Below, one piece after another: positions 17,395-55,502 of a DNA stretch of 64,000 bases. The translations under genes were made by a program, and so were the position numbers. Position 1 is the first letter of the stretch. Every line of letters starts with the position of its first letter. The stretch lies in NCBI GenBank assembly GCA_001938485.1, contig MQRK01222230.1, forward strand, positions 1-64,000, in the 5' to 3' direction. Below the pieces are notes generated by a model, which saw only the letters and a program-made list of their open reading frames with translations, ran no database searches and was not told where the DNA came from. Source of the stretch: Girardia tigrina. Lineage: Eukaryota.

Positions 17395-17484
17395 AACTAT
17401 TTGTAAATCGATCTTTAAGGTTTTTAAGAATTGCATAAACATTTCGAAATTTCCGGAAAGTACGATAAATTTATAAGCCATTCT
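17395..17484 (-). CDS. Candidate cytoplasmic exon of the multi-Ig receptor
   Basis: Acceptor ctttag after a 44-nt intron (17485-17528); open in phase 0 (RMAYKFIVLSGNFEMFMQFLKTLKIDLQIV); candidate donor gtgaga. Confidence 0.4.
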
Positions 17485-17528
17485 CTAAAGAATTATGTTA
17501 CATGCAAATAAGAAAAACAAAGATTAAC

Positions 17529-17731
17529 TTTTGATATCCTTTTTTTCTCAAAAAAGCCGAGTATTAAGTATAATTCCAAGCTGGTTATATATTCTTGGTG
17601 TATATAATATGCGCAGATCGAAATTATCAGAAAGATAACTTTTAAAATAATGGCCCATAAAATAGAAATCAATATAATGTATGATTGAACTTTTTGGGGG
17701 AAAGTTTTGAAATTAAAAGTAATATTAATTC
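17529..17731 (-). CDS. Transmembrane exon of the multi-Ig receptor
   Basis: Acceptor ttttatttag; phase-1 frame open: INITFNFKTFPQKVQSYIILISILWAIILKVIFLIISICAYYIHQEYITSLELYLILGFFEKKRISK; donor gttaat. Not in the ORF track because it lacks a start codon. Confidence 0.6.
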
Positions 17732-17769
17732 CTAAATAAAATAATATATAACACTTAATCTATAATCAA

Positions 17770-18300
17770 AACTTGAAAGCCAATTAAAAACGTTTATTAA
17801 TTTCGACGGTTTAACCGTCATCGTCAGAACAAATGATTTTTCAAAAGAAATTTACTTATATAGTGCAGTTAATGATTATGCAATCAATANGTAATCAGTA
17901 CATCATTTAAAAACTCTCAACAAAGTTGTAGAGAGTGTAGTTTGAACGTTAATTTTAGGATCCAAAGATCTAATATATAACGCTTCACATGTCACTCTCT
18001 CCCAATAATTTTTAAATTGAGTGCACAGAATTTTAAAGTGTTGTTAAGTTATATCTCCTTTACAATGTCTTCTATGTCCTGCAATGTTAATTCCACCTTC
18101 ATTGCGACTGTGTTCCTGGATTCTCTTACAGAGATGACGTGAAGTCTCTCCAATGTATGTGGCGTTACACCCATTACATGTATATTGGTAAATGAGATCC
18201 GAACACAATCCCAATGGCGTTGGAGATTTATTGCCGAACATGCTTTCAATTTTCTGGGTACGGGATATTACTTTTAAACTTATTGCATTTCATCGGTTAA
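17770..18300 (-). mobile_element. Penelope 3' fragment with hammerhead
   Basis: LIYQYTCNGCNATYIGETSRHL..RIQEH (GIY-YIG), followed by a 3' region with a hammerhead. Confidence 0.9.
17792..17830 (-). ncRNA. Minimal type I hammerhead ribozyme
   Basis: Reverse complement gtt-CTGACGA-t-gacgg ttaaa ccgtc-GAAA-ttaa-TA-aac; AUA triplet. Confidence 0.85.
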
Positions 18301-18524
18301 ATCAATGTTACTTAAGTTTAAAACAGTATTTTTAACATTAAATTTAAAAACACCAAACAATTAATCTATAAACCTTAATTTTATTATAAATTTTAAAATA
18401 AATAATTTCATCAAAGGAACAAATTGACATAACTTTTGTGCTATCGATTTTTATTATAAATTGTACCTGTGGAATTTAACATGCGATTTTCATGTGTAAC
18501 AATAAAATTTATTTTCTCATTCTA

Positions 18525-18771
18525 CAGGGTGCCCAGTAGAAAACCAAAGGATTTTATGAAACCAAAGTGTTTTTAATTAAACACGTGATAAAGGCAAACA
18601 ATTATACTTACATAAATAAGCTTGTTCTTCAGTGGTTTTCAAAATGTTCTCCGTCATTGTTGCAACACTTTATTTTATTTATGTAAGTATAAATTTGTTT
18701 GCTTTTATCAAGTGTTTAATTAAATAATTTTTGGTTTCATAAAATCCTTTGGTTCTCTACTAGGCACTCTG
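18525..18771. mobile_element. Tc1/mariner-derived MITE
   Basis: ~40-bp TIRs cagggtgcccagtagaaaaccaaaggattttatgaaaccaaa; TA TSD. Confidence 0.85.
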
Positions 18772-18950
18772 TACTGTTTCGCCATTTTCTCGTAACTAGG
18801 GCTCGATATAAATTGCACCAAAAATACTTAAAACTTATTTTTATGATTATGACTAAGGGCTGGTTAAAATAATGTTTAATATATTTTTGGGAGTAGAATA
18901 AATTTTAAGTCTTTGTGTAATGATTATAGTCATTTAAATATTCACACGTT

Positions 18951-19408
18951 TGTGAGGGATAATTCGGAATGTAGTAAGTTTGTTATTTGCATGCTGTTTT
19001 AATTTGTAGCTCTCCTACTCAGATGGGATTGATATGTTTATTGATTGATTATTTAAATCTAATGATATTAATTTTAAATACTAATTAATTAAAGTTTTAT
19101 AATTATGAATTTTAATAATATTTTTAGTAAACAATTTTAACTTATTAAATTTAATATATTTTAAAAATTAATGTTCATTTAAAAAATTACATAATGCCTT
19201 TTTATCCAATAAAATTTAAGCAATTAAAAATTAATATTAAAAAATTTCCCATTCATTGTTTTTAGATTTGAATATATAAACAAAAACTATATCAATCAAA
19301 GAAAGATGCTCTCTGAAAATTGCTGTGAAGAATCTGTTTGTATTGTCAATAAATGTTTACATTCAAATTGTGATGTTGTTAATACGTTTATTTAAAATGT
19401 GAACTACA
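18951..19408 (+). mobile_element. Solo LTR
   Basis: TG...CA ends, TATA-like tatataaa, aataaa, and similarity along its length to 51617-52090; no clear TSD. Confidence 0.7.
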
Positions 19409-19499
19409 TTCGGTAAAAACAGTGAAAATTATTCTATTAATTAATATATAAAAGACAAAACAAATACGGGATGATTTCCAGAAAATTATATTTTATTGA

Positions 19500-21103
19500 A
19501 ACAAGTTTTAACGTTTTTTATAAATCATTTTTGGATGTTCCTCGCTAACAAAACAACAATTAACGTCACTTTTTGTGTGAGATTTTTGGTCAAAATTCCA
19601 ACCTAGCTTACATTGAACTTTTGCTTTGCGAACAACATAATATTTGAGTTTGCATTATTAGCTGTGAAGGGTTTCCGAAGAGCTGTTCCAATATAAAAAT
19701 AACCCTCTTTTATAACTTTTTTGGCACTCCAGAAAGGAAACACATGCATTGATGCTTGAAATATAAATTATGAATATTTTGTAATGTAGGTTGACACTTT
19801 CACATTCATGACATCTACTTACTTTTTAGTTTTGTTGCAATGGGCAATAAAAATTGGCTTGCTGTTCTTAGTGTTAGTCCTTTATATACGTCATGTCCTT
19901 GTATCTTTTTTTGTCAAAACGTAAAAAGCAATTTATAGTTACTAAGCGACAGATGCATGTTTCTTCGAAATATTATTCTGTCCTGATTTGAACTTCATAA
20001 CTCTTTAAAAGACTTATGATTGTCTTTGTACACACCTTCTGAAATACAAAAATCCTAAAAGGCATGAAATTCTAAACGAGAAATTCTTTTCACTTTCACA
20101 ATTAGCTTCAACAATGCTATGTTCAAAAATGTAGTTAAAGGAGATATAAAATCTTTGACTCGAGATGAATGTAATTTTTTATAGCGAGCTTATGACATAG
20201 AATATTTCTACCTTATATTTGATCAATATTTTTGAAGACTTAATCAGTCAATATTACACCAGATGGGCTGCTGACGTACTTTTCTACTGCTACATTATCC
20301 TTAAATTCTTTATTGTCAATATCTAATGCCTCTTTCCATAGTGATAGCACTTATCACTTGCTTTATGTCCATCTGGATTTTGAAAATATAATAGATTCAA
20401 AGAATGTTGGGAAACTATCTTTGTACTATGGCTTGGATTCATAAGATATATAATTAATTGAATTTATAAAACGTTTTCCGTAAGTACAAGTAATCTAATA
20501 AATAATATGCCATTCATCAAAATAAAAATCAGAACCGTAGCCATCGGGTGGCAGAAGGGGGCTGAGCACCACCTAGACTTCTCCATGAATGATTTTCCAT
20601 GACTAACAATTTTTATTTCTATCCCATTTAACAAATTGGAGTGTGAATGAGTGGTTGGAGAAAAGCAGCACAATGATTCTCTTCTTTCCTGCCAATGCAC
20701 GCAAATCACAATTTGAATAAAGTTTATACAGCAAAACCTCTCCACAGTAGAACTTCTGTGACATAGAAGCAGTCGATGTTACAGACCAGCCAATCTAACT
20801 TGAGCTACCAGGCATTTGAAGCATAACGTTCGAATTGCATCAATTTTGATAACATTTATTTCACTCACAAAAGACAGAAAGTTGCAAATGTTTTAATTAA
20901 TGTTACAATGTTGTCATTCTGATGTTTGTATTTAGTATAATACTATGGCCAACACTGAATTTCTTATTTCCTTTCACAAATAGTACTTAAAATAAGCACA
21001 ACATAATCCACTACATAGACGATAGACAAGAAAATACCAGAAATAATCGATTATCGAGCCACACCTGAGCCCCATCTAACGTTCTCGGTTGGCTACGGCC
21101 CTG
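19500..21103 (-). mobile_element. Degenerate hAT element
   Basis: Terminus cagggccgtagccaacc (same type as 27496); heavily decayed transposase. Left boundary approximate. Confidence 0.5.
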
Positions 21104-21149
21104 GTAAACATACTACGATATAAAAAACTAATAAATTAAAATTATTTAC

Positions 21150-21374
21150 TCCAACGTTTATTTTCAAATAGAACATGATGATTCAATCGAAAGAGCATTT
21201 AATGGAAGTAACACGATAAATAGATATTTTGTGATACCAAAAACTTCCCTTAAAATCTATGTGCTTGGGGTAGGATTCCTTTTTGACATTTTCTCGATCA
21301 TCGAAGATAACCAACAGTAAAGCTGATTTTCCTTGTTCATGAATATTATGAACTAACGGGTGTAAAGGCAAAAT
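21150..21374 (-). pseudogene. Candidate decayed domain exon of the Ig-like locus
   Basis: Open frame with one internal TGA (21183-21185) and donor gtaaat; 5' part abuts a MITE terminus (gcgaagcaagac). Confidence 0.35.
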
Positions 21375-21434
21375 CTGGCGAAGCAAGACATTTCGACGCC
21401 AGAAATTAGGATTTAAATGAAATATGAATAAAAT

Positions 21435-21680
21435 GAAATAACTTGTTATTAATTAGGATTTTTAGGATAAATATTAAATAATTTGTTATTAATTATGAAT
21501 TTTGGGAATAAAATTAAATAATTGGTTATTAATTAGGATTTTTGGGCATAAAATTAAATAATTGGTTATTAATTAGGATTTTTGGGCATAAAATTAAATA
21601 ATTGGTTATTAATTATTTAATTTTTGGGCATAAAATTAAATAATTGGTTATTAATTAGGATTTTTGGGCATAAAATTAAT
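21435..21680. repeat. 40-bp tandem repeat (~6 copies) inside a MITE-like insert
   Basis: Unit attggttattaattaggatttttgggcataaaattaaata. Confidence 0.9.
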
Positions 21681-22052
21681 GGTTTCCTTATCATTTTTAA
21701 TTTTAAGATATTGAATAAGCATATTAACATTAAAATATTTTACCTTTAAAAAAATAATAAATTATTCTGGCGAGATAAAAATTTAAATTAACCCCTCATA
21801 ATACGTATATTGAATATTGAACACATCAATATAAAATTAATTATTATTATTGATAAGTTGTTTAAATAATCAGTCTTTTACAAAATGAGAAAAGGTATAA
21901 ATTTGAACTATTATGAATAACGAGTTCATAAGCAGAACCTCAGCATCAGAAACCATTTAAAACATCAATTATATATATATATTAAGATTTAATGGCAATT
22001 TATTTGTAAAAAAAATAAATAACAAACGCGATTTTAAAAGTTTTTTATTTCT

Positions 22053-22087
22053 CAAAACATGTTTCGCCATTACGGCATCATCAGTTG
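22053..22087 (-). ncRNA. Minimal type I hammerhead ribozyme
   Basis: Reverse complement caa-CTGATGA-t-gccg taa tggc-GAAA-catg-TT-ttg. Confidence 0.85.
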
Positions 22088-22153
22088 TGAAATAAATTTC
22101 AAATTACAAGTCATTTATATGGCACATTGACTTGTAATTTGAAATTTACTTCA

Positions 22154-22188
22154 CAACTGATGATGCCGTAATGGCGAAACATGTTTTG
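22154..22188 (+). ncRNA. Minimal type I hammerhead ribozyme
   Basis: caa-CTGATGA-t-gccg taa tggc-GAAA-catg-TT-ttg; palindromic stem III, GUU triplet. Confidence 0.85.
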
Positions 22189-22223
22189 AGAAATAAAAAA
22201 CTTTTAAAATGGCGTTTGTTATT

Positions 22224-22306
22224 TATATATATATATATATATATATNNNNNNNNNNNNNNNNNNNNNNNNNNNNNNNNNNNNNNNNNNNNNNNNNNATAT
22301 ATATAT

Positions 22307-22341
<35 letters not shown>
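22224..22341. repeat. (TA)n and (GATA)n microsatellites around an assembly gap
   Basis: Seen directly in sequence. Confidence 0.9.
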
Positions 22342-22479
22342 CAATGCTACTACGCAACAGATAGTCTCAAATTTGTTCAGGAAATTATTGAAAGGTAATT
22401 TAAACCTCAATAACGAATTTCGGGGTCACCCAAGAACGCAGGTAGACAAGGATTGCATTAAGGATCGTAACAAAACTAC

Positions 22480-22760
22480 AAAAACTTGAGGTGACCATTC
22501 TGTATCCTCCTCTATGCTCACCAGATTTAGCCATAACTAATTACCATTTCTTCCTAAATTTGAAAAACTTTTTGATAGGAAAAAAATCAATTCCAAAGAT
22601 GCCTCAAAATAACATTCGAGGAATTTATATAATTCTTACCCACCCAATTTTTATTTAAATTGCCTCAACAAGCTGGCGCTCGGATGGAAAAAGTGTGTCG
22701 ATAATATGGCTGTATACGTTGATGAATGACATAAGCATATTTATTGGTAAATTATCAATA
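22480..22760 (+). mobile_element. mariner 3' remnant
   Basis: Decayed (H)PP.SPDLA..(D)YHFF..L motif and RW.KCV. Confidence 0.65.
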
Positions 22761-23014
22761 AACTTTGACTTTAGTTTTACGAATTTCATACGTGTTTTCT
22801 TTTTTTACAAATATTTGATCTGGATCACTTAAAACATTTATATGCTTTCACAAAATTATTTAAAAGAAATCGTCAGAAATCGGTTATTTCTTTAAAGAAA
22901 CATGTTATAAATATTAATTTTCAAATGATATTCAAAAATGTATTTCATAACTTAAGTTAAAATGTTAAATTATGTTCTTTACAATTAAACAATAGGAACA
23001 TCTTTAAAACCTAC

Positions 23015-23353
23015 TTTCGAATTCGAATAAAAATGTTTGTGACTTGCTAATACTTCCTCCACCTTTAGATGATGATACAGCGATACACGTACAAAAATAT
23101 AAACCTTTCTGTAAAACATAATCGAACCTCAAAGTTTGAACATCCTCCAATTGTACATTTATTAGAAAATTTCCGTATTTATCTATAATACTATCGTTAT
23201 AAGATTTCATATCGTACTCCATTTTTATATAATCATCACTCTGATTACAAAACCAGCTATAAACGAAAACCCTGTCAATGGAATTCGATTTACAAGTAAC
23301 GGCATATCCTCTTTTTACCAAACCGGGGCTCAAATATAGTTGTAGATTGTCCT
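23015..23353 (-). CDS. Multi-Ig receptor exon 9 (WxC/CxC Ig-like domain)
   Basis: Acceptor atcacag, donor gtaggt, phase 1/1, 339 nt open: LYLSPGLVKRGYAVTC...YSWFC...GLYFCTC. Confidence 0.85.
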
Positions 23354-25989: not shown

Positions 25990-26550
25990 TTAAAAACAAA
26001 TAAACGCCATTTAAAAATATATTTTAGGATAGTATATTTCGACGGTTTAACCGTCATCATCAGATCACTGATTATGTTCTTTTTTATTGCTTTTATATAA
26101 GAAATGAATGATTATGCAATCACTTACGTAAGTCTAATCGAAAACTCTTAGCAAATTAGTTGAGAGTGCTGTTTGAACATTGATTTTAGGATCACATGAT
26201 CTTATCAACAATGCTTCACATGACACTCTATCCCAATAATTTTTAAAATGCTTGCACAAAATCTTAAAATCATTTATGCTCATATTACATTTACACGTTT
26301 TTTTATGCTCAGCAATATTACTCTTTCCCCATTTTTGACTGTGTTCTTGGGCTCGTTTGCAGAGATGACGGGCAGTCTCTACGATGTATGTGGCATTGCA
26401 CCCATTACATGTGTATTGATAAACAATGTCCGAACATACTTAGGAGTATGTGATTTATTGCAAAACATATTCTCAACTTTCATTAATACTATCATTAATA
26501 CTTTCATTATCCTAAAATATATTTTTAAATGGCGTTTATTTGTTTTTAAA
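25990..26550 (-). mobile_element. Penelope 3' fragment flanked by 41-bp inverted repeats
   Basis: Similar to 17900-18250; inverted arms 25991-26031 / 26508-26548. Confidence 0.85.
26028..26066 (-). ncRNA. Minimal hammerhead with mutated cleavage triplet
   Basis: Reverse complement gat-CTGATGA-t-gacgg ttaaa ccgtc-GAAA-tata-CT-atc; U16.1 appears as C. Confidence 0.7.
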
Positions 26551-30389: not shown

Positions 30390-31135
30390 TGATAACAATA
30401 AAATACTGATAATAATATCAATAATAATAATAATTTAATTATATAAATAATTAATAATAAATGATAATAATACTANNNNNNNNNNNNNNNNNNNNNNNNN
30501 NNNNNNNNNNNNNNNNNNNNNNNNNNNNNNNNNNNNNNNNNNNNNNNNNNNNNNNNNNNNNNNNNNNNNNNNNNNNNNNNNNNNNNNNNNNNNNNNNNNN
30601 NNNNNNNNNNNNNNNNNNNNNNNNNNNNNNNNNNNNNNNNNNNNNNNNNNNNNNNNNNNNNNNNNNNNNNNNNNNNNNNNNNNNNNNNNNNNNNNNNNNN
30701 NNNNNNNNNNNNNNNATAATAATATTATGGAAATAATAATAATACTTTTTTTTAAATCAAAATAATAATATTATTTATAAAAGTGGTAATAATTAGTAAA
30801 AATAATATTACTAGATTTGTTTTTTATATTTTTAATTAATTATTTTATATCCCTAATAACTTCCACGCGTCCCTGAGCGCTAGCTCAAACTACTGGAAGC
30901 TAGAAAGGGATGAGACATCACAAAGATTTCCGTTTTAATAATTATTATATATTTTGTTTTATTATTTTTCTTACAGGGCTCACTATGCAGGAGTGAAAGA
31001 TTTTTATAGGTATGATTTTAATTTCAGGATCTCAACAAATATAATAAACCAATTAATTGTATAAACACATTGCTTGATAATATTAAAATATCAAATTATA
31101 AAACAAACTTTGACTCAAGTTATTGTGGATTTACT

Positions 31136-32549: not shown

Positions 32550-34474
32550 GATTTACCCATATAATGTGAATTATAGTGCTAACACTTAAAAAACGAAGGT
32601 GTTACAATATAACTTATTTTACTTTCACATTGCTTTACTAATTTAGATTTTAAATATTGACATTNNNNNNNNNNNNNNNNNNNNNNNNNNNNNNNNNNNN
32701 NNNNNNNNTTCGATTCAAATAAATTTTCATACTGTTTGCTGATAGTTGATTTATATTAGGCCTACCTGATGCCAATTCACATAAAATTTATTTTACTTAA
32801 TGTCCATTTTAGGCCACAACAGTCACATGGATAAGTTTGTCATTCGTTCCAGTACAATGCCGGTATCAGCAAGGAAGCCATCATCCACCACCTCCTCAAC
32901 TTCTTCATCTCCTGGGATCTCCGCTTCTTCAGCAGATTGGGCTTGCCAAATTATGTATAAAGCGGCTACCACTTTTGCACCTCCACCTGTTTTGGCTGTT
33001 CAAGAGGCACTAATACCAGTGCTTAATTCAAAAGTAACTCAGTTGATACATCCAGATGATCTTGGTACAGCCAGCCCCTGCAAGCCAAAACTGAAAACTT
33101 ATCCCTTCACGAAATTCTGAGACAAGAATCGATCATTTGGTGGACCCCTGTGGTATTCAAAGTTCTCTTGGCTATAGTACTCCATCAAACAGGACAAGTG
33201 CTTCTGCTATCCATGCCGGAAGTACACACACTGCCACGACCTCCCATCTGACAGTGTATTCTCCGTTAATGGTTTTTCAAACTGGAAAATAGGGTTGGAA
33301 AAGGGAAAAGGTCTATTACGACACAACTTGTCACAATCCCACATGGTAGCTATGGAGAAACGGAAAGAACATACCATCCGGGCAGCAAAAGGAACAGAAA
33401 TACAGTAGCTTCTCTCTCCTCTTCAAATTGAGAAGAATCGCTACTATTTGCAGTGCATATTTGATGTCTGCCAATTCCTTGTAGTAAATGAACTTTTATT
33501 CCGGGGTTCCACCGAAAATGGCGAATCAATATTTTCCACTGGGAAGTTTCTCAGCCTCTTGTCATATACCATCAAGAAGGATGAGAAATGGAAGGAAATC
33601 GTGAAGTCCATCCCAGATTATGCAAATATACATCACCATAAATACAAAATATGATCATCGAAGACATGGCTTCTATTGTCAAAAACAAAATCGTACACAT
33701 GGTGAAACCAAGCGACTGCAATATGTTCACATTAAAATGCGATGGCACGCGAGAAAAGAAAAATGTCGAGAATTTCTCTGTTGTTGTGAGATTTGCCTTC
33801 CAAGGGAAGCTCCATGAACATCTCATCGAAATAACTGAGCTGGAACATGATGAACTGGATGCTGAATCAATGGCAAACAAGATCATTGAAATCATCAAAG
33901 CCTTCGACATCGACCCTTCCTCAATGATCAGTCAATGTTATGATGGTGCAAGTGTGATGTCTGGTAAGCGAAGTGGTGTTCAGAAGCAGTTGCAAGACAC
34001 AATTGGTGTGCATTGTTTCGTGCATTGTTTCAATCACCAGCTCCACCTGGTTGTAACAAATGCATTAAACAGACTGACTTTTGTTCGACGCATGTTTTGC
34101 CTTCTTAGAAATGAAATCCCTATTGTGAAACCTTTTATTCTCCACAGGACTCTGTCAAAAGAAAATGCTGACCAGATGAGAGTGCAGCATATCAACGAAT
34201 TGCTGTATCCATACAAAGAATGCAAAAAGTATCCATACAAAAGATGCATTCCCACAGACATAAATTATTCACAGGGGCACTCACTTTTGGAGCATCGACA
34301 GCCACCTGCGAGAACAGTTTCTTGACATTGACAAGAATTTTGTACCCTGCACGTCGATCAATGCTACAAACTCGAATGAAGGATCTGGTGCTGTTAGCAT
34401 TTGAGCGGGAAATCACATCCACAATTTCAAGCGAGGAACTGTTCACCAAATTTAGAGAAAAAAAGAGGCGTTTA

Positions 34475-34585
34475 GTTGTCTGATTTCCATTATACTAGTT
34501 GTCTGATTTCCATTATACTAGTTGTCTGATTTCCATTATACTAGTTGACTGATTTCCTGTATACGTATTAGTTGCCTGATTTCCT
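34475..34585. repeat. 22-bp tandem repeat (~4 copies) at hAT 3' end
   Basis: Unit tagttgtctgatttccattatac-like. Confidence 0.85.
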
Positions 34586-35010: not shown

Positions 35011-35298
35011 GTATGAATGCATAATTTAAAAGGCCATTAATAGATCTCTTAACTCGTCTTGCATAAATCGTGAAAAAAAACTGATAAAATCCATCTACGC
35101 TTCTGTTACCAAGTTTATAATATACAAATGCTGCTGGTATCTTTGGTATGTCTTGTATCGTTTTTTCTAAATTTGTTAATAAACTGCTTTGGAAATTTAT
35201 TATGTCCAAGTAAACTGGAAATCCCATTTCTAAATAAATGGTAACTGGATTGCTCAGCTTCTGTATTCCGTTCCAAGTAACACTTATAAATCTATAAT
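35011..35298 (-). CDS. Multi-Ig receptor exon 8 (Cys-less beta-rich domain)
   Basis: Acceptor ttattttag, donor gtaatt, phase 1/1, 288 nt open: YRFISVTWNGIQKLSNPVTIYLEMGFP...VDGFYQFFFTIYA. Confidence 0.75.
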
Positions 35299-36419: not shown

Positions 36420-36734
36420 ATTTACAAAGAAATAGTGATTCTACTTTTCCCAATGGAAATTGTCGACACCACGTCACCATGGGTAATTCAAAAATAAACA
36501 TTTGACAGGTAATCTTTACATCGGAATCTAAATTATATGTGTTATTAAATCTCAAAGCATTCGATGAAATGTAAAATGCATTTATCAGTGACACTGGTGA
36601 AACTGTGAAATATCGTATATAAGTTAAAGACCTATCGTAATTCCCATAGAAGAGGCACGAAAAAGCTAGGCCATCCTCTTTGGCTATGTTTTCACAACAG
36701 TAATTCCTGCTTACTTTGCTCATGTGTTTGTAAT
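36420..36734 (-). CDS. Multi-Ig receptor exon 7
   Basis: Acceptor atgtttcag, donor gtaagt, phase 1/1, 315 nt open: GLAFSCLFYG...VKITCQMF. Confidence 0.8.
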
Positions 36735-41008: not shown

Positions 41009-41320
41009 TAAACATCGTAATTTTCCATTCTCCATTAACAAGTGATTCATTTGTATCCTTCCAAACTAAATCCCATTTTAATTGTGCACAAGAATAAGCA
41101 AACACAAAAGGTAAATATTTAAGTGGATAAATTATGACAACATTTGTATAAAGGGAATAATAAGAAAAGACTATTTCAATAGAAGTAATTTTAATGGCAA
41201 GGATCTTTGAGAGTAACGGATAATTTAATTCGGATGTTACAACGATGGGATCTTTATCTTGTATATCATACGCACATGGTATGGAACAATTTAGATCAAT
41301 GAATCTCATTATCGGAGTAT
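41009..41320 (-). CDS. Multi-Ig receptor exon 6
   Basis: Acceptor cttttag after a 50-nt intron, donor gtaaaa, phase 1/1, 312 nt open. Confidence 0.8.
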
Positions 41321-41370: not shown

Positions 41371-41685
41371 TAGATTTTGGAACTTGAAAATCTAAAGGCC
41401 GACAATGTTTTGTATAATCATCAATAAACCGACATCGACATTGGCACATAATGTTTTCGTCAAGAAAGAGATCATTCACCAACAATGTATTATTTTCAAG
41501 GTAAAATTTAGTCAAAATATATTTTATTTCTTCAAAAGTATTTAGCTTGTTATTTGGAGGTATCGGAATACTTTTATAACTGCATTTTATATAAACCCAA
41601 AAATAATCAGCAAAGTTATTTATTATACACGACATAAGGGTATTAAAGGCAAATTGTTTTGGTCTTAAAATAAGATTTGGTACAT
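41371..41685 (-). CDS. Multi-Ig receptor exon 5 (P-x10-C...IxC...CxC domain)
   Basis: Acceptor tttcttttag, donor gtacga, phase 1/1, 315 nt open: VPNLILRPKQFAFNTLMSC...YIKC...MCQCRC. Confidence 0.85.
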
Positions 41686-42336: not shown

Positions 42337-44524
42337 TATAAATTTTATATCAATGGATAAAACCAAATTTCGGTCTTGATAAAACTTTGTTATCTGATTA
42401 ATACAATTACTGTTGAAATGAAACTCTGGCATCAAAAACCTTATGGAGAATCTGCACCAGGGAAATCCCTCATTATTTATTCGTTTTGCCAAATTTAATT
42501 GCAGTTGTATGACTACCGATGATCATGAACGTCAAAGTCACCCCAAATCCGCTGTTTTTCCGGAAACCATCTAAAAAATTCACGACATATTTTTGAAGGA
42601 ATGTAAAATGAAATTGAGTGAAATAGACACCATCTTGAAGATATCAGAAGGCAGTGTCTTTACCGTTTTACACGAAAATTTGGGTGTGCGTAATTTGATT
42701 TCGAAAGGGACGTTGCGTTTGTTGACATCAGATCAAACACAACAACGCATCGACAATTCACAACGCTGTTTGAATCTGTTCAATAGAAATAAAAAGGATT
42801 TTTTGCGTCGATATATAATAATGGATTAAACTATTTCATACTAGAATAAAAAAAATCTTCACGTAAGTGGAAAGCATCCGGTGAAAGTCGTACAAAACGA
42901 CCGAAAACTGAATATTCAGCTGGCAAAGTTATGTGTTTGGTTCGATTTGGGGGGATGATACAGCCGATTTCACCAGTGCAAATAGGGCACGTGTGGAGCG
43001 CATCAAAAGTATTGAAAATGTCAAGATTATTCGCTCTATGTTCAATGATTCAGCGAAGACGATTCCTAAGAATACAATGGTAATCAGCGAGTTGAATGTG
43101 GCAATAAAGCAACAATCAACTGATCCAAATGTTTGGAATGAATGATTTTGCAGTCACAGTAATATTGCAAGACCAAATCTATCAACACCTTTGAGTCAAT
43201 CAAGTTCGGAATGTATAAAGGGTCAATCTCAATCCTTGACAAACTTTGTGATCAACATTAACAATCGTTCTGTTGAAAACAATGGAAGATAACGTTCTTA
43301 CAATGGATCGAATCAACGTTATTCGGAAAATATAAATTGCATTCGATCAGCTCTTCTGCAAGATCGATCCAGTAGATTCAATCGATCGCAAATTGAATGT
43401 GTAAAAGACAATATAATCGAAAATCTCGTGCAATTTCATCTCATACTGAATTTCAGTTATTTGAAGAAAATGAGTCTCGAAAGAGACAAATTACAGATCT
43501 TATCAAACGGTTATTGACTGATTATGCTATCCGACCGAATAATTAGAGTGACGGCGGATCACAAGTTATTCCACGTAAGAGTAATTAGACTGAAAACCAA
43601 AAAATAACTCCTACAGGTGGTTGTACCAAAAATATCTCTGTATTATATGAGGTACTTGTGATTCCCATCTGAAACAGAAAACTAAAGAAAAGCTCTTGAA
43701 TCTCGTTGAGTCAGATTAATCTAAATAATTACCCGCCTGGTCATTGTACAATAAATATCGATCGGATGTCACCTCGATGCGAAGGGATCTATCACCGCCA
43801 CCCAATGTTCAGAAGAATAAAGCGATCTTCAATAATATGATTATTCTACCAAATTTCAATGATGACTCAATAGATGATAATTTATTCAACGATATCAGCA
43901 AGGTTCATTTATCGCCGGTGTCTCAACAAATATCAGTTCAAAAACCTCTTTCTAAAGATTCAGATGTTATTTTACCTCCTAAAGTGTCTTTGGTCAATAA
44001 AAATACACAAGTATCAAAATCAAAAAAAAAGGTAATCAGTGAGTAAATGAGTGAAAAGAGTCGACAAGAAATTGAAACTAAATCAAACATTGGTCACTTC
44101 ATTTTTTTGCTTAATTCATACTAGAATAAAAAAATCTTCACGTAAGTAGAAAGTATCCGGTGAAAGTCGTACAAAATGACTGAAAACTGAATATTCAGCT
44201 GGCAATGTTATTAAATCCGTATTTTTGGACGTACGCAGGTTTTGGTTTATATACTACTTACAGAAAGGTTAAACCTATCAATTGTGATTATTATATGACA
44301 TGGTTTGATCGATTGAGTAATTTGATCAACTTTGAACCATCTGCTCTTAAAGCCTAGAACTCGAGATAGTCGACTTTTTTAGGTTTCAAAATTTTTTTTG
44401 AATTTTATGTCAAAAAATAAAAAAACAAAGGGTGAATTTATTATTTATTCATCAAAATCATCACAAAAATTTAAAAAGCAGGTGGTTCAAAGTGTATCTT
44501 ATTCAGCGCGGTGAGTTCTATATA

Positions 44525-46270
44525 CCGTGTGATTCATAAGTCGTCGTCTCAAGATATGGAACTATACTCCGATGTAATGTAAAACTTTTTGAATATGATA
44601 TAAATGTATTACGACATGGTTTTTTACGCAGTACAACTTGAAGACATGAAAAGAAAAAGGTTTTACAATAATTGTTCAAAATGTTCACCATTTTTCTGCA
44701 AACACAGATTGCATCGCTCCACAAAATTCGTGTAGCATTTTAGAATGATGCGGTGATCGATGTCTGACTCGACCTTTTCTCTTATAAAGCAAAGAAAAGC
44801 TATGGTTTTCTGCAGACTTTCATATTCAATTATATTCCTTTGATTGTTTACGCCCTATTGATTGATTATCCGGTTATTCAATATCTATGAAATTGAAATT
44901 TTAAATGTCTGATATTAGTTTGTGTACTTTCACTTTTATTCAAATGCGCCAACTGCCAGTACAATGGCTGAANNNNNNNNNNNNNNNNNNNNNNNNNNNN
45001 NNNNNNNNNNNNNNNNNNNNNNGATATTAGTTTGTGTACTTTCACTTTTATTCAAATGCGCCAACTGCCAGTACAATGGCTGAAGCAAGTGGAAATGTCG
45101 AATTTTCTATTAAAGATAAAGTTTTCATCACTAGTCATGTAGTCGTTTAGGAAAGCTGCACAAAAGCGTGTCAAATTTTTAAAGAGCGTTTCAAACGTGA
45201 ACCGCAACGTGAAGAACAACGGTTCAGCATTGGAAGAAGAAATTCGAAGAAACGGGGAATTTGTCAACAAAACCGCGATCATGAAGACCATCTGATGAAC
45301 ACATGAAGGAAAGTGTTGTTCAGTATGTGAAAGAAAACGATACTGCAAATCAACGACGGGTTGCACGTGTCCTTGGTACTTCGCAGAGTTCTGTTCATCG
45401 TTANNNNNNNNNNNNNNNGGTAAAGCCTTTCAAGTTTTCTTTTCAACAAGAGTTAACAGAAGATGACCCAGATCGAAGAATTGAATTTTGTTCTTGGATA
45501 ATCAACGAAAATGGCACCAATTTTTGCAGAAGAATTATTTTTTTTCTGCTGAGGCATCGTATTACCTTAATGGTCATGTGCGAAAGCATAATCTTTTTTA
45601 TTATTCTGAAGAGAATGAACATCGTTTGATTCGTGTGCCTATGAAATCGCCGGGATTAACTGTTTGGGCAGCTGTTTCCTNNNNNNNNNNNNNNNNNNNN
45701 NNNNNNNNNNNNNNNNNNNNNNNNNNNNNNNNNNNNNNNNNNNNNNNNNNNNNNNNNNGCTGCCTTTTGTTGGGGATAACACGCAACACTGGTATCAACA
45801 TGATGGCGCACCCCCGTATTTCAGCATTGCAGCGCGAACGTGGCTGGATGAACATTTCCCACAAAGATGGATTGGTCATATAGGACCCCAGGAATGGCCA
45901 CCTCGGTCTCCCGATTTGACGATACCTGACTTCTGGCTATGGAATCACGTCAAAGATCGAGTTTACGCCATCGAAAATAACTATCTGAACCTCGACGAAC
46001 TACAAGGCGCCATTTCAAGAGTGCTGTCAGACATCGATCACCGCATCATTCGAAAATGCTACACGAATTTTGTGGAGCGATGCAATCTGTGTTTGCAGAA
46101 AAATGGTGAACATTTTGAACAATTAATTGTAAAACCTTTTTCTTTTCATGTCTTCAAGTTGTACTGCGTAAAAAACCATGTCGTAATACATTTATATCAT
46201 ATTCACAAAGTTTTACATTACATCGCAGTATAGTTCCATATCTTGAGACGACGACTTATGAATCGCACGG
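44525..46270 (+). mobile_element. Tc1/mariner DD41D (rosa/Visitor, long-TIR type) element
   Basis: ~215-bp TIRs, TA flanks; FS(A)EA, QHDGAP and WPPRSPDLTIPDFWLW with 41 residues between the second and third Asp. Confidence 0.9.
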
Positions 46271-46685
46271 TATGTACCAATTTTCATCGAAATCGGGATG
46301 TGCGGGTTCGGGAGGTTCCCTAGTAAGAGAGATTGTTGTGAATATGTAAGATTTATCAATTCGGATATAATTTTACTTTTATCCAACTGCTTTTTTCATT
46401 ACCTGATTGTTTCAGGAATAATAGTTGTTCTAGCCTTTCTGGTCACTATAATGTCAGTGTATAAACGAATAATTACTTTAATGTAATAATTTCAAATTAA
46501 ATGTAATGGTTTGTAGAAAAAAAACGAATTAATTATGTTTTAACATAACATTCTTTTTAAAAATGATCTTTTAGAGTTAGAAATACTGTAATTTTTATTT
46601 TGGAATAAAATTATTCATATTTTGAAGTAAAATTGTTTATAGTTTAGAATACAGCTATTTATATGTTGGAATAACTTTGTAATTA

Positions 46686-47380
46686 CTCTGAAATCTCGTT
46701 ATAAGCCTTAGGCTTAGTAGATAAAAAAAGTTTTTTTTCAGCTTGGTAGAGGCTTAGTATCAAGGCTTAGTAAAGAAATTAGAAAAATTAATTAAATTTT
46801 TTTTATTTTAATATAAAAACTTAAATCTGATCTTTATCATCATCTTATTCATCAATTCCAAAGTTTCTCTCATCCGTTAAAATGTCAATGAGTTGATCAC
46901 GAATTTCTTCATCATTAGTTTCCATGTCATCATGGTTATCATGTGGGTCTTCTTCGGAGACTTGATCAATTTCTTCTTCATCATCACCGTAGAATTTGAT
47001 TGTTGTCTTTTTGAAACCACTTGCAATTGTTGAGACTGGAACTTCATTCCATGCTTCTGAAATCCATTTTGTAATTTCTTCGTATGATACACGCTTTAAA
47101 TTTCCAGATTTTGTATAATTTTTGTAACCATTTATGAGCCAATTTTCCCACCTGCTTCGAATACGTGATTTTAACGATTTATTGACACTGATATCTAAGA
47201 CTTGTAGTTTTTTAGTTAGACCTCCATGAATCATATCCATCAAAGTACCACTGCGATAAAGATTTTAGATAAAAATTCAGGTAGCAGCTTAGTAAAAAAT
47301 TAGAAAAATTATGATGACCGAAATTATTTATTAAGCCTCGGGCTTAGTAACTAGTAGAGGCTTATAACGAGATTTCAGGG
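46686..47380 (-). mobile_element. Internally deleted pogo element
   Basis: TIRs ctctgaaatctcgttataagcc / ggcttataacgagatttcaggg; TA TSD; IHGGLTKKLQVLDISVNK..K and WISEAW. Confidence 0.9.
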
Positions 47381-47451
47381 TAAGTCTGAAAACGCTAGAA
47401 GCTTAATTACACAAATAATATTTGTTAATATGTAAATATCATGATTAATAC

Positions 47452-47760
47452 TTGTTATGGGGAGATGAAACCTTTTCCTGTTGAACTCCGTAGCACTAAA
47501 TTTACCTTCACACCAACAGGATATAATCTTTAGTTGAAAGATCAAATTCAAATGGAGTTCGTTTTCAACATCGACAAAGATTTGATCAAAAACTGATTTC
47601 GAATATGGATCGAGGTAGTCTCTATATTTTCGGTTTTCTAATAACAATGTAAAATTATTGAAATCACAGTACCACTTCAGACTTAGAGCTGTATTTAGAA
47701 CCGAAGAGCAGGTTAAAATGTCAAATGCATTTGGATAAGTTGGTGTAATAATCACAAAAT
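47452..47760 (-). CDS. Multi-Ig receptor exon 4 (WxC/CxC Ig-like domain)
   Basis: Acceptor tatatcag after a 48-nt intron, donor gtatta, phase 1/1, 309 nt open: ITPTYPNAFDILTC...KWYC...ISCWC. Confidence 0.88.
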
Positions 47761-47808
47761 CTGATATAAAAATAATTATTTAAAAATTTAAAAATACGAT
47801 AATATAAC

Positions 47809-48108
47809 CTTTAGTAGTTAAAAGAAAATCTATTTGAGGGAATGCTTCTCCGGGGATGGATACTTTATGCTTGACAATACAAAAACAATACAGAATACGT
47901 TCTAATTTGTCGAAAGATAGATTAATGATATTTTCCTTGATTTTCAAGGATTGAATAAAGGATGTGTCCTTAGCCGAAATAGTCTGCTTGGATTCGTCTA
48001 CATAACAACCCCAATCATAATGTAAATCTCCCAACGGTTGATCGAAAAGACATTCCAAATTTTGTTTCAATCGGGGAACTTTTGGTTTTAATGAAAGTGT
48101 TCCATAAG
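47809..48108 (-). CDS. Multi-Ig receptor exon 3 (WxC/CxC Ig-like domain)
   Basis: Acceptor actgtag, donor gttata, phase 1/1, 300 nt open: LSLKPKVPRLKQNLEC...YDWGC...LYCFC. Confidence 0.88.
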
Positions 48109-49257: not shown

Positions 49258-49332
49258 GAATATGGATCGAGGTAGTCTCTATATTTTCGGTTTTCTAATA
49301 ACAATGTAAAATTATTGAAATCACAGTACCAC
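49258..49332. repeat. Exact 75-bp copy of exon 4 sequence (47601-47675)
   Basis: Identical by direct comparison. Confidence 0.95.
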
Positions 49333-49360
49333 AGTACAATACCAAATCAATTATGGTTAA

Positions 49361-49785
49361 TGTGAAGTGAACTCACACATTTGACAGAACATTTATTACA
49401 TTCACAATTTTGATCATCTCTTTGACGATCAATAGTATTGCTTGCACTTAAATCCATCACTCAATGTTTAATACTTCTCATTTCAATCTGAACTTAAAGA
49501 AAATTATTTTATTTAAAATATTTAAATTAAATTTTATTGGCTAAAATAAAATTACTTTTTAAAATCATTTTTAAACATTAATTTGATTTAATTATTTAAA
49601 ATTTACAATAATAAAATTTAAAAATTTAAATATGTAATCTAAATTTGAATAAATTAGTTTAAGATAATAAGAATTAAAATATTAATCATCCATCCGATTA
49701 GGAGAGGCACAATCCCAAATCAACATAAAACATTTAAACATGCAAACACTACACAAAAACATCAACACACCAAATATTCCTCACA
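49361..49785 (-). mobile_element. Solo LTR
   Basis: tgtga...tcaca termini with perfect 5-bp TSD gttaa. Confidence 0.85.
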
Positions 49786-51616: not shown

Positions 51617-52090
51617 TGTGGAATATTCAATAAAATTATTGAATCTCTGGATTTTGAGTATTTTACTTATTAGCAACATCACAATTTGCATGAACACATT
51701 TATTAACTACACAAACAGACATATTTTCAGTAGCATTCTTTGTGGAAAGCATCGTTCTTGATTAATATGTTTTTTGTATATCTATTCAAATCTTTGCTTA
51801 ATGAATGAGATATTGATAATACTAACTTTTAATTTCTCAAAATTTTATTTTATAGAAATGCATTAAGTAAATTTTAAAATAAACATTATTTATTTCAACA
51901 AGTTAAATAGTTTACTAAAAATATTATTAAAATTAATAATTATAAAACTTTTTAATTAATTAGTATTTAGACATTAATCTCATTAGATTAAAATAATTAA
52001 TCAATTTATCAATCCCATCTGAGTAGGAGAGTCACCAATCTAAGCAGCATACAAATAATAAACTTACAATATTCAGAATTTTCCCTCACA
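51617..52090 (-). mobile_element. Solo LTR
   Basis: TG...CA; similar to 18951-19408 (ctctcctactcagatgggattgat; caaattgtgatgttg). Confidence 0.75.
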
Positions 52091-53008
52091 GTACCATTTT
52101 CCATAATTTTCTTGTGTTAAAAAAGAACCTTTTGGTGGATTAAGTGGTGGAAACGGCACTCCAAAGACCAAACTATTAAATTCAGCAGTTACCATCGAAT
52201 TATTTGGTCAAACATTTTCAAGTAGTACTGAATACTTCGGTATTCAACATTGATCCCACAGCTGCACTTGTACAGAAAACAAAATGTTCTCCTTATTTGA
52301 GTGGTCATTTTTCCACTCCATCTTACTCTTGTTCGTGTTTCCTCTCATGGAAGTATTCTTACTGTACTACTTAATCTATATACTTTCCTTCCAAATAAAA
52401 CTTCTGCCAGGCTCCGTTCGATTGATTTCTGATGTGTTGCATTAATCGTAAATTTCCTATGAGATAAAATCTCGACCCGATTCGTTTCTTTCTTTTCTTA
52501 AATACTAACCTGGATGTATTCCTGTTTAATACTGAATTAAATTTTTAACATATAATTTTTTATAATTTCTGGAAAAAACAATTATAAACATACAGATATA
52601 TTTCTTTAATTTCTTTAATTTATTATTGTTTTGAAATTTCCGTAAAACCCTTTTATTTTTATGTTATTATTTACTTTTATGTTATTACCAATTTAAACCA
52701 CAGAAGAGATACTATTTTTACAATGTAACTATTTTTTTAATCTGGAAATTTAAAATAAACTTCTTCAAATACATTATTTTCTACTCCAAAATTATAAAAT
52801 AAATAAGTATACAAATGTATTTTTAATACATACAAGAAATTTTAATATTATAATTTTAACTATCGGTCATTAATAGAAAATATATGATGTATACATCAGT
52901 TTAACAAGGGTTTAGTTAAATTTAGGGTTTAGTTTACTTAATTGAAGTATAGTTTACACTTTTTCGAAATATTCATAGACTAAAATATTCATAAAAGAAC
53001 TAATTTAC

Positions 53009-53293
53009 TTGACGGTACATCGATAGATAGCTCGACATGACTGCGATAAAATTTTTTTATCCAACAGTAACATGTACAAGAAAAATTGGTTCCATATAAA
53101 AAATTCATTTTAATTTTTATTTTAAATGATGATTTTTGTGTTTTGTAACATACGTAATCTAGGTAAGCACTTCTGGTATGGCAAAAGTTACAATCCCATC
53201 CGATACCCTGATATGGAATTGATATTGTCAGATTACAATACATTGTCTTGTTCAATTGAAAAGGAAGAGGATGTATTTTTAGAAATGGGACAA
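53009..53293 (-). CDS. Multi-Ig receptor exon 2 (WxC/CxC Ig-like domain)
   Basis: Acceptor ttattttcag, donor gtaaat, phase 1/1, 285 nt open: VPFLKIHPLPFQLNKTMYC...IGWDC...FSCTCYC. Confidence 0.88.
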
Positions 53294-53799
53294 CTGAAAA
53301 TAAAAGTTGTTATATTGATCAAACTTTAAATTTGCATAAAATATTTTTATCTAAGTATATCTAAGATATCTTAAATATTTTAAAACGTCGAGTTGTTTAA
53401 TTAATTATTAAAAGTTAAATAATCACTTAAATTAAACTAATATTTCATAAATAATATTTTAATAATAATTTCTTAAAATAAAAAAATTATTTTAAATTTC
53501 AATTATAAATAATTTTTGTAATAATTAAATTGTATTTTAAATTTGTTTGAATAATAAGACGTTAAAGAATAATACAGGGTTTGTCAGCACATTTCAGAAT
53601 GACATCATCACATTTAAGATTTTTGTAAATCAATTTAAGAATTTTGTACATCCGTTTAAGAAATGTAAAATCAATTTAAGAATTTTGTAAATCAGTTTAA
53701 GAATTTTGTATTTCCATTTAAGAAATTCGTCAATTCATTTATGACTTTGTGTAAATATTGCGAAATATACAAGTTTACAAATACCTAAATCACAGAAAC

Positions 53800-54550
53800 A
53801 AAAACTAAAATGAATCTTCTTGTTACTAATCACAATTACAAAATGCCACACTCCTCAGCTACTGTCTAAAATAGTGTAATGAAATTTTTCGATGAAAAAA
53901 GGTGAAACTATGGTTTCTTAAACTATGGTATTTATTCCACAAAAAAATTGAAAATGAGGAAAATTTTACAATTACAGTAGATTATTGGACAGATAAAGCT
54001 ATGCTAAGATATCTAAATGTTACATTACAGTCGGTTGATACACAATACCTTCGAAAAAACAGAAGAAAGACTTCCGGAATATGGTGTTATTTTAATCGAG
54101 ATATTATTCCATCAACACATGATGGCGCAAGTGTCAAATTTCTGCTGAAATTCAATGTTTCTTTAATCATGCAATACATTTGATTGCAATATTTTGCATT
54201 AGACTGTAATTGAAATATTTTACATTAAACGTAAGCTCAATGGTAATAATTCTACTGATGTTGAAGATGAGTATGATGATGACGAGAATAATGACGAGAA
54301 TGAAGTTAAGTATAAAATGAAGGTATAATTGAATCTGGTATGCTCCTTCAGTTTTGCCCAGGGTATGATGTAGCGCTAGCAGAAATACTTTAGTTTTTTT
54401 AAATATTACTTTTTTAAAGAAACAAACTATTTTTATATAATTTTAACGAATTTCTTTGAATTTTTCAAATTAACCGGGTAACTCGGGTAGTTTCGAGAAT
54501 TACTACTCGAATACCCGGGTATTTTCAAATCGGGTAATTTGAAAACACTA
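53800..54550 (+). mobile_element. Degenerate Ac-like hAT remnant
   Basis: ITVDYWTD....YLNVTL and STHDGASV; terminus ...aaaacacta. Confidence 0.6.
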
Positions 54551-55132
54551 GTTTTTTTTATAATCGACCTTCTTTACATTCCGACGCAAACGTAACATTC
54601 AATACAAGAATAATTCTTATTTAAATCTTTCTCGTGTTAGTGCATGTGTAGAGAAAGGAAGGTGTTTGATAATAGATTGCATAGATTGACAGAAAAGTAA
54701 GGCTATTAATCGCATATATGGATGTAACTGAAGACACACTGTCAATTGATCGTAATGATCACATTCTGCAGTATTTAAATCCAAATGGTACCTTTAGGTG
54801 CATTTATTCAAAATAATTCCATCTTCAATAATGATTGAAGATGTATCCATATAATATAAAATCATTTATTCATAAAAATGCTTTGTACTAGAATGTCAGT
54901 TGGTAGAGGCTGAGAAAACCTGATTGAAAATGAAAGACTTCAAAACAAATAATTTAAAAAACACAAATAGAAAATATTAATATATTGCTTCAAAGTCTCT
55001 CTCTGGCTCCGGCCATCCGGCCACTAATTTTCCGGTGAATCCCTAATAATTACGATTAGCTTAAATTTAAAATAGACAAATAAACCGGCGCCAAAAACCA
55101 CTGTACCCCATTAAAAACCCGAAAATGATTAC

Positions 55133-55502
55133 TTTTTGCGTGAAGAATCTCAAAACTTTCGTAAATGACGCCGCCCGTTAAGTATTCACAAATAATCTTT
55201 ATGTCAATGTTGGAAAATTCGATATTAATAGTCAAATTTTCTTGAGACACGGAAAACCGGGGAATAATGTAGGAATTTTCGAAATCGGTAAACTCATTCG
55301 AGTTGCCCGCAGACGGCAATTTTATTCGGTTATTGTGCATCTCCAATATGAATGTATATACACCTTTGATCGAGTCATTCTTTGCCTCACATTTGGCCAC
55401 AGATTTATATCCGACATTTCTAATCTCAACACTCACACAATCGCTCTCAATCATCAAATGGACGTATAACATTAGGGAAAGAAGTGAAGAACCAATTGAC
55501 AT
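55133..55502 (-). CDS. Multi-Ig receptor first coding exon: signal peptide + V-like domain
   Basis: ATG preceded by an in-frame stop; hydrophobic leader MSIGSSLLSLMLYVHLMIES; AKC...LTINI...IICEY Cys pair ~67 aa apart; donor gtaatc in phase 1. Confidence 0.8.

What the first reader, a model, noticed from the sequence alone, without database searches (positions are those of the whole stretch)
17395..55502. Hidden ~38-kb gene for a divergent multi-Ig type I membrane receptor built from symmetric phase-1 exons
Seen: ten minus-strand segments with canonical AG/GT boundaries join in one frame with no stop: 55133-55502, 53009-53293, 47809-48108, 47452-47760, 41371-41685, 41009-41320, 36420-36734, 35011-35298, 23015-23353 and 17529-17731 (3036 nt, 1012 codons). 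Every domain exon is 285-339 nt, a multiple of 3 and phase 1/1, while neighbouring transposon ORFs are riddled with stops. Established: one domain per phase-1 exon is the hallmark of Ig-superfamily surface proteins. Inference: a functional, lineage-specific recognition or adhesion receptor (leader, nine beta-sandwich domains, TM, short tail). I do not recognise an orthologue. The domains are very divergent from each other, and any exon could be skipped in frame, as in allorecognition or immune-type receptor families.
Basis: partly seen in the sequence, partly recalled or inferred. Interest (0 to 1): 0.88.

Follow-up and report, generated by a model that had tools for sequence, protein, structure and literature searches.

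The report
Orphan tandem-immunoglobulin cell-surface protein gene
An intact-looking 38-kb invertebrate gene, hidden among transposon debris, encodes a single-pass surface protein made mostly of unusual antibody-like (Ig) domains with no detectable relative in protein databases; it is probably a cell-adhesion or recognition molecule, but nothing yet shows an immune role.

Summary
All ten minus-strand segments sit at the stated coordinates, stop-free, with AG/GT edges; exons 2-9 are phase 1/1. No assembly gap falls in an exon. Continuity across the gaps is well supported in intron 4, plausible in intron 9 and only indirect in intron 8. Seven of the nine ectodomain exons (E1-E5, E7, E9) form one divergent Ig family. 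A profile of them hits only Ig-superfamily chains in PDB (best E=0.0025), and an AlphaFold model of E9 is all-beta with beta-sandwich neighbours. Five (E2-E5, E9) carry an unusual four-cysteine pattern in which a Cys replaces the tyrosine-corner Tyr. E6 and E8 could not be shown to be Ig, so 'nine beta-sandwiches' is unproven. No homologue was found among 1.8 billion representatives (E2-E5, E9 profile), and there is no paralogue in the window. The 3' end is uncertain: a 37-66 aa tail, no ITAM/ITIM. Best reading: a lineage-restricted tandem-Ig type I adhesion/recognition glycoprotein. Exon skipping, polymorphism and an allorecognition role are untested; symmetric phase-1 exons are the norm for such genes, not a sign of immune function.

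The parts
55542..55609 (-). Candidate 68-nt 5'UTR intron (CAG|GTGAAT donor, TTTTAG acceptor); an in-frame stop lies just upstream of the ATG
   Evidence: inferred from sequence only
55133..55502 (-). E1: ATG, signal-peptide-like leader (about 22 aa) plus Ig domain 1 (two-Cys type, B-F Cys spacing 67)
   Evidence: (E1 vs E5+E7 profile: 2/1000 shuffles)
53009..53293 (-). E2: four-Cys Ig-type domain (WxC, CxC), phase 1/1
   Evidence: 40/1000, the weakest of the five
47809..48108 (-). E3: four-Cys Ig-type domain, phase 1/1; followed by a 48-nt intron
   Evidence: (6/1000)
47452..47760 (-). E4: four-Cys Ig-type domain, phase 1/1; a stronger internal donor at 47506 would remove the last 18 aa in frame
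   Evidence: (0/1000)
41371..41685 (-). E5: four-Cys Ig-type domain (Trp replaced by Ile), phase 1/1; followed by a 50-nt intron
   Evidence: (8/1000)
41009..41320 (-). E6: domain of unresolved fold; has a YxC motif and a Cys pair 62 apart, possibly a degenerate Ig
   Evidence: no signal against the Ig profile
36420..36734 (-). E7: Ig-type domain (two-Cys core, spacing 50), closest to E5 and E1
   Evidence: 0/1000 vs E1+E5
35011..35298 (-). E8: Cys-free domain of unresolved fold, with a furin-type RVKR site near its end
23015..23353 (-). E9: membrane-proximal four-Cys Ig-type domain; weak Pfam Unc5_NetrinR_N match
   Evidence: E=0.027, below cut-off; 0/1000
17529..17731 (-). E10: short stalk, TM helix (KD19 3.1, with a central Lys) and start of the tail, ending in a basic cluster
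17395..17484 (-). Candidate exon 11 (90 nt, phase 0) after a 44-nt intron; either reads on to a stop near 17362 or splices over a 47-nt intron onto TAA. Alternatively E10 reads through to a stop 11 codons past 17529.
   Evidence: not resolved

Best explanation
A single, intact spliced gene of an AT-rich invertebrate animal encodes a type I membrane glycoprotein of about 1,020-1,050 aa: signal peptide, nine ~100-aa extracellular modules (one per phase-1 exon), one TM helix and a short tail with no enzyme domain. At least seven modules are V-frame-like Ig domains that arose by old internal exon duplication. In five of them a Cys two residues after the C-strand Trp position and a Cys at the tyrosine-corner position probably form a second, C-to-F disulfide beside the usual B-to-F one (inferred from register). 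Most likely the protein works as a long, disulfide-stiffened, N-glycosylated rod that binds a partner on another cell or surface (homophilic or heterophilic adhesion/recognition) through its distal Ig domains. Any signal would pass through a partner protein, since the tail is short and the TM holds a Lys. It may be cut by furin in E8. Shown: exon anatomy, open frame, relatedness of seven modules, Ig affinity at borderline-to-moderate significance. Inferred: splicing, disulfides, cleavage, function.
For: Exon chain and chance test. Leave-one-out profiles relate E2-E5, E7, E9 and E1. The seven-domain profile hits 17 of 17 IgSF chains in PDB (TCR V-beta E=0.0025, CEA, embigin, Fab) with B-Cys and C-Trp in register. 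A second profile aligns end to end to the PD-L1 V domain, the second Cys of CxC on the canonical F-Cys and the first on the tyrosine-corner Tyr. The E9 model is all-beta, pLDDT 68, and its nearest PDB structures are CEACAM N domains, PVR, PD-1, JAM and other beta-sandwiches. 14 N-glycosylation sequons against 7.9 expected. TM helix. No coding-like downstream exons or non-transposon ORFs that could hold a kinase or phosphatase.
Against: No single exon passes any Pfam Ig model. Of four Ig-module profiles tried on PDB only one reached E<0.01, and IgSF chains are over-represented there. Foldseek E-values are 0.02 or worse and TM at most about 0.5, with non-IgSF sandwiches mixed in. E6 and E8 show no Ig signal, and the low-confidence E8 model has a long helix. 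There is no expression data, and two gaps in intron 8 are not independently bridged.
Confidence: 0.68

Rival explanations
1. It is one member of a clustered, highly polymorphic self/non-self or pathogen-recognition receptor family (like Hydractinia Alr), generating variants by allelic diversity and in-frame exon skipping, and signalling through an adaptor that pairs with the TM Lys.
For: Extreme divergence from everything in the databases. One domain per exon, as in Alr (PMC9546547), and all-phase-1 introns, as in sponge aggregation factors (PMC5400394). TM Lys with a short tail resembles adaptor-coupled activating receptors (own knowledge).
Against: No paralogue or pseudo-exon array in 64 kb; no ITAM/ITIM. 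E3-E4 and E5-E6 are tied by 48-50 nt introns, which in such genomes are probably intron-defined (PMC13594981), making single skipping of those exons less likely. Phase-1 symmetry is general for extracellular modules. Absence from databases may only mean the lineage is unsampled.
Confidence: 0.2
2. It is a fast-evolving orthologue of a conserved IgCAM or guidance receptor (nephrin/SYG-2-like, or derived from an UNC5-type first Ig domain) that the searches could not reach.
For: E9 weakly matches Pfam Unc5_NetrinR_N over most of the model (E=0.027). From memory, UNC5 Ig1 has the same two-disulfide CxC arrangement; not tested here.
Against: UNC5 has two Ig, two TSP1, ZU5, UPA and death domains (PMC10084454); none of the non-Ig parts is seen. 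UNC5 chains do not appear in PDB searches at E<=10. Orthologues of conserved IgCAMs normally hit Pfam I-set/V-set models; these do not.
Confidence: 0.12
3. The model is a scaffold chimera or a recently dead gene: E1-E8 and E9-E10 come from different paralogues joined across gaps, exons are missing in gaps, or it is not transcribed.
For: Gaps at 30476 and 32665 in intron 8 are not bridged by unique sequence. With all-phase-1 exons, frame cannot reveal a missing or foreign exon. Several donors are weak.
Against: All exons are on one strand in a sensible order (leader first, TM last). E9 belongs to the same module family as E2-E5. There is no stop or frameshift in 1,012 codons while intronic transposons are fragmented. 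All stated gap sizes are smaller than a domain exon, though they are estimates.
Confidence: 0.1
4. It is the ectodomain half of a catalytic receptor (tyrosine kinase or phosphatase) whose cytoplasmic exons lie further downstream.
For: Candidate exon 11 ends in a good donor (GTGAGA at 17394). A furin site in a membrane-near module occurs in receptor phosphatases (own knowledge).
Against: The nearest acceptor gives a 47-nt intron followed by TAA. The 17 kb downstream holds only transposon ORFs and no convincing coding exons.
Confidence: 0.05

Closest known systems
Tandem-Ig type I adhesion/recognition proteins with V-set/I-set domains (CEACAM, nectin/PVR, PD-L1, JAM as structural neighbours)
   Same: Signal peptide, tandem Ig domains one per exon, B-strand Cys, C-strand Trp, E-strand hydrophobic residue and F-strand Cys in register, single TM, short tail.
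   Different: No tyrosine corner (Cys or Ile there), an extra Cys pair in five domains, no hit to Pfam Ig models, 11-21% identity between its own Ig modules in the alignments, two modules of unresolved fold.
Hydractinia Alr family (PMC9546547)
   Same: Invertebrate, very divergent IgSF single-pass proteins; each domain and the TM on its own exon; hard to detect with HMMER.
   Different: Alr have 1-3 Ig domains plus an Fn3-like spacer, lack the B-F disulfide, are clustered (41 genes), and many carry ITAM/ITIM. This gene has nine modules, keeps the B-F Cys pair, has no neighbouring paralogue in 64 kb and no ITAM/ITIM.
UNC5 netrin receptor first Ig domain (Pfam PF25609)
   Same: Weak match to E9 (E=0.027); from memory the same C-strand Cys plus F-strand CxC pattern.
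   Different: Below Pfam's cut-off (15.2 vs 27 bits); only one exon matches; no TSP1, ZU5, UPA or death domain.
Sponge aggregation factors (PMC5400394)
   Same: Almost all introns in phase 1, domain-bounded exons, low similarity between repeats.
   Different: Built of Calx-beta, VWA/VWD and Wreath domains; none detected here. An analogy of gene architecture only.
Schistosome Sm200 (PMC3066142)
   Same: Large lineage-specific surface protein of unknown function.
   Different: Sm200 is GPI-anchored and about 200 kDa; this has a true TM followed by a tail. No sequence link appeared in the homology searches; no direct pairwise comparison was possible.

Membership tests
Immunoglobulin superfamily (V-frame: V-set/I-set) | Two-sheet beta-sandwich of about 100 aa | tested here: met
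   For E9 only: all-beta model with eight strands, pLDDT 68, beta-sandwich neighbours at TM 0.4-0.5. Extended to E1-E5 and E7 through relatedness.
Immunoglobulin superfamily (V-frame: V-set/I-set) | B-strand and F-strand Cys pair 50-75 apart | tested here: met
   Invariant in seven modules, spacing 50-69. Absent in E8, doubtful in E6.
Immunoglobulin superfamily (V-frame: V-set/I-set) | C-strand Trp of the pin | tested here: met
   Present in E2, E3, E4, E9; replaced by another hydrophobic residue in E1, E5, E7.
Immunoglobulin superfamily (V-frame: V-set/I-set) | Tyrosine corner (DxGxYxC) and CD-EF salt bridge | tested here: not met
   The position two before the F-Cys is Cys or Ile in all seven modules. 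Alr domains also lack these and are still counted as IgSF (PMC9546547), so this bars a canonical V-set/I-set label, not the superfamily.
Immunoglobulin superfamily (V-frame: V-set/I-set) | Significant match to curated Ig profiles or Ig sequences | tested here: inconclusive
   No Pfam Ig hit per exon; profile-to-PDB best E=0.0025, all hits IgSF; other profiles E>=0.35 or no Ig hit.
Immunoglobulin superfamily, modules E6 and E8 | Ig or Fn3 fold | tested here: inconclusive
Type I single-pass membrane protein | N-terminal signal peptide, one TM near the C-terminus, basic residues inside | tested here: met
   Hydropathy only; no dedicated predictor was available. The basic cluster lies about 20 aa after the TM, not directly against it.
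Hydractinia Alr family | 1-3 Cys-poor V/I-set domains plus Fn3-like ECS | tested here: not met
   Nine modules with the B-F Cys pair kept; the membrane-proximal module is a four-Cys Ig.
Hydractinia Alr family | Clustered paralogues, high allelic polymorphism, allele-specific homophilic binding | not testable with these tools
   Only 64 kb of one assembly; no paralogue inside it.
ITAM/ITIM-bearing immune receptors | ITAM or ITIM in the tail | tested here: not met
   None in the three tail options.
UNC5 receptors | 2 Ig + 2 TSP1 + TM + ZU5/UPA/death | tested here: not met
   Architecture differs; only a sub-threshold Ig1 match (PMC10084454).
Sm200-type GPI surface protein | GPI anchor signal at the C-terminus | tested here: not met
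   The hydrophobic stretch is followed by a tail of at least 26 aa with a basic cluster.

The most novel reading that the evidence does not exclude
The gene is the first seen member of an undescribed, lineage-specific family of polymorphic recognition receptors built on a four-cysteine Ig module, with in-frame exon skipping and adaptor coupling through a TM lysine. It would be a candidate self/non-self or immune-recognition system in an animal group (gene architecture fits planarian-like genomes; organism not identified) where none is known.
Probability: 0.15. Interest if true: 0.8.

Novelty: new variant of a known kind. Interest (0 to 1): 0.42.

Why it matters
It shows a large, probably functional surface-receptor gene that homology-based annotation would miss entirely, and defines a repeated Ig module with an unusual cysteine pattern that can be used as a profile to look for a family. 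If that family proves expanded and polymorphic it would be a candidate recognition system in an invertebrate lineage. If single-copy, it is one more orphan Ig adhesion protein, a class known from many invertebrates.

Tried and rejected
Homologue searches, all blank: E9 alone and the five-domain alignment, both limited to proteins of 0.55-1.75 times the query length; the five-domain profile against 1.84 billion representatives, no length limit; exact look-ups of ten window ORFs; metagenome contigs with E9 and E1; phage records with E9. E1, E6, E7, E8 and E10 were not searched in the large protein collections. Pfam and NCBIfam per exon: nothing above cut-off. PDB by single exon (E9, E8, E6): only chance hits; the E8+E6 profile hit on Saglin (E=0.026) is taken as chance. 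The hhalign score of A1 against A4 is circular because E5 is in both, so it was discarded and replaced by leave-one-out tests. An E6-E8 relationship, suggested by eye, was not significant. The E8 fold search rests on a pLDDT-44 model and is meaningless. Identifying the organism through a Penelope-like fragment led only to unnamed metagenome contigs. No Rfam family or tRNA; the promoter scan is bacterial and at chance level.
Full report
Setting. The window is 29% GC with no tRNA or Rfam match. Apart from the ten segments, its long open stretches are, where recognisable, transposon remains: pogo/Tigger, MULE, DDE and hAT-like by Pfam, and Penelope-like and Tc1-like by relatives and terminal repeats. 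It has spliceosomal introns in two size classes, about 44-68 nt and 1-12 kb. This is an AT-rich invertebrate animal and not human. A short-intron peak of 45-85 nt with a broad long class is described for planarians and Drosophila (PMC13594981), so a planarian-like source fits, but I could not identify the organism.

Observation. They have no stop in the gene frame and 3-13 stops in each other frame; E2-E9 are symmetric phase-1 exons of 285-339 nt with YAG/GT edges. A splice-site scan finds six phase-1/1 open exon loci on the minus strand against 0.21 expected (max 2 in 100 shuffles); the two on the plus strand are in transposon-derived stretches. The thresholds were chosen with the exons in view, but the margin is large. 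It is backed by codon-position bias (p=4e-6) and by exon GC above flank GC. Retaining either short intron stops translation within a few codons.

Assembly gaps, tested without filling them. No N falls in an exon. In intron 4 the three gaps lie inside one element bounded by 93-97% matching terminal inverted repeats at 44519-44768 and 46026-46276, and the 44973 gap is flanked by a 62-nt exact overlap, so both sides belong together. In intron 9 the 22247 gap interrupts a (TA)n run. In intron 8 the 30476 gap has AAT-rich repeat on both sides, and the 32665 gap has no bridging sequence. The link of E9-E10 to E1-E8 therefore rests on the scaffold, the shared strand and phase, the leader-first/TM-last order, and E9's membership of the same module family. 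Because every exon is phase 1/1, frame cannot reveal an exon lost in a gap.

What the modules are. E2, E3, E4, E5 and E9 align with five invariant residues: a Pro, a Cys near position 19, a second Cys 14-15 later (in WxC in four of them) and a CxC. Leave-one-out profiles recover E4 and E9 (0/1000 shuffles), E3 (6), E5 (8), E7 (11) and E2 (40). E1 and E7 are recovered from the E1/E5/E7 subset (2 and 0/1000). E6 and E8 are not recovered. So seven modules are old duplicates of one unit. A profile of the seven, searched against PDB sequences, returns 17 hits at E<=10, all Ig-superfamily: TCR V-beta best at E=0.0025, CEA, embigin and a Fab, with B-Cys and C-Trp in register. A five-module profile aligns end to end with the PD-L1 V domain (E=0.35). 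There the second Cys of CxC sits on the canonical F-strand Cys and the first on the tyrosine-corner Tyr. Two other profiles gave at most one weak antibody hit, and Ig chains are abundant in PDB, so the sequence evidence is moderate. The AlphaFold model of E9 is all-beta (eight strands, pLDDT 68, pTM 0.61). Its nearest structures are CEACAM N domains, PVR, PD-1, JAM and nanobodies mixed with other beta-sandwiches (E>=0.02, TM about 0.3-0.5). Together these support an Ig fold. The only Pfam lead is Unc5_NetrinR_N on E9 (E=0.027, below cut-off); from memory UNC5 Ig1 has the same cysteine arrangement, which is a lead and not a test. E6 has a YxC and a Cys pair 62 apart, and E8 has no Cys and a GxYxF stretch, so both could be degenerate Ig domains by eye. 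But the E8 model is unreliable (pLDDT 44) and partly helical. E8 ends with a furin-type RVKR site, expected about 0.1 times by chance in this ectodomain.

Ends. E1 opens with a hydrophobic leader, preceded by an in-frame stop and a probable 68-nt 5'UTR intron. E10 holds a 25-residue TM with a central Lys. Its donor is weak. Three endings are possible: read-through (37-aa tail), a 44-nt intron and an exon running to a stop (66 aa), or that exon cut at 17395 and spliced over 47 nt onto TAA (56 aa). None has an ITAM or ITIM. The 17 kb downstream shows no convincing coding exon, so a catalytic tail is unlikely though not excluded.

Relatives. None found. The most telling blank is the five-module profile against 1.84 billion representatives. 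Even exact copies of the window's ORFs are absent from the collection, so the lineage may simply be unsampled; the blank does not prove uniqueness. There is no paralogue or spare Ig exon in the window.

How it most likely works. A glycosylated (14 sequons against 7.9 expected), disulfide-rich rod of nine modules stands out from the cell and binds a partner through its distal Ig domains, as tandem-Ig adhesion and recognition proteins do. With a short tail and a charged TM residue, any signalling would go through an associated protein. The anatomy is shown by sequence; binding, cleavage and signalling are inferred. Phase-1 symmetry is the usual footprint of exon-shuffled extracellular modules (for example sponge aggregation factors, PMC5400394). 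Alr proteins differ in domain number, cysteines, clustering and tail motifs (PMC9546547). Sm200 is GPI-anchored (PMC3066142). UNC5 has a different architecture (PMC10084454).

Verdict. A real, probably functional gene for an orphan tandem-Ig type I surface protein with a non-canonical four-cysteine Ig module: a new variant of a well-known kind. Interest 0.42; it would rise to about 0.8 if a polymorphic, expanded family were shown (probability about 0.15).

Noticed in passing
window 49258-49332 (minus strand, intron 2): A 75-nt, 100% identical copy of the interior of exon E4 (47601-47675) inserted 1.6 kb upstream of it in the same orientation, without splice sites. It looks like a recent templated insertion or an assembly artefact.
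   Followed up: partly
window 49378-49487 (minus strand): Exon-like 110-nt piece with a good acceptor and a GTGAGT donor just upstream of that copy, containing a short Cys-rich stretch; by eye it has early stops in all three splice phases, so it is not part of the gene.
   Followed up: partly
window 47506: Internal phase-1 donor in E4, scoring higher than the annotated one; its use would delete the last 18 aa (G strand) in frame.
   Followed up: partly
window 44519-46276: Tc1/mariner-like element with about 250-nt terminal inverted repeats spanning three assembly gaps; the 44973 gap looks like a false gap (62-nt overlap).
   Followed up: yes
window 46683-47383: Short pogo-like DDE remnant with 26-nt terminal inverted repeats, ending 69 nt from the E4 donor.
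   Followed up: no
window 8423-10181: Near-complete but frameshifted pogo/Tigger transposase (CENP-B and Tc5 HTH domains).
   Followed up: no
window 555-1292, 16868-17138, 17800-18289, 26036-26439: Several Penelope-like (RT-adjacent/GIY-YIG) fragments; the closest database relative of the first is 59% identical and comes from unnamed metagenome contigs.
   Followed up: partly
window 22015-22226, 18523-18773, 56151-56474, 52-1466: Palindromic or inverted-repeat MITE-like elements; also 40-nt and 21-23-nt minisatellites at 21428-21740, 34473-34564 and 53607-53756.
   Followed up: no
L003:1912-4227: A 771-aa ORF with no Pfam match next to a Penelope-like RT on an ENA metagenome contig; unrelated to the finding.
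   Followed up: no
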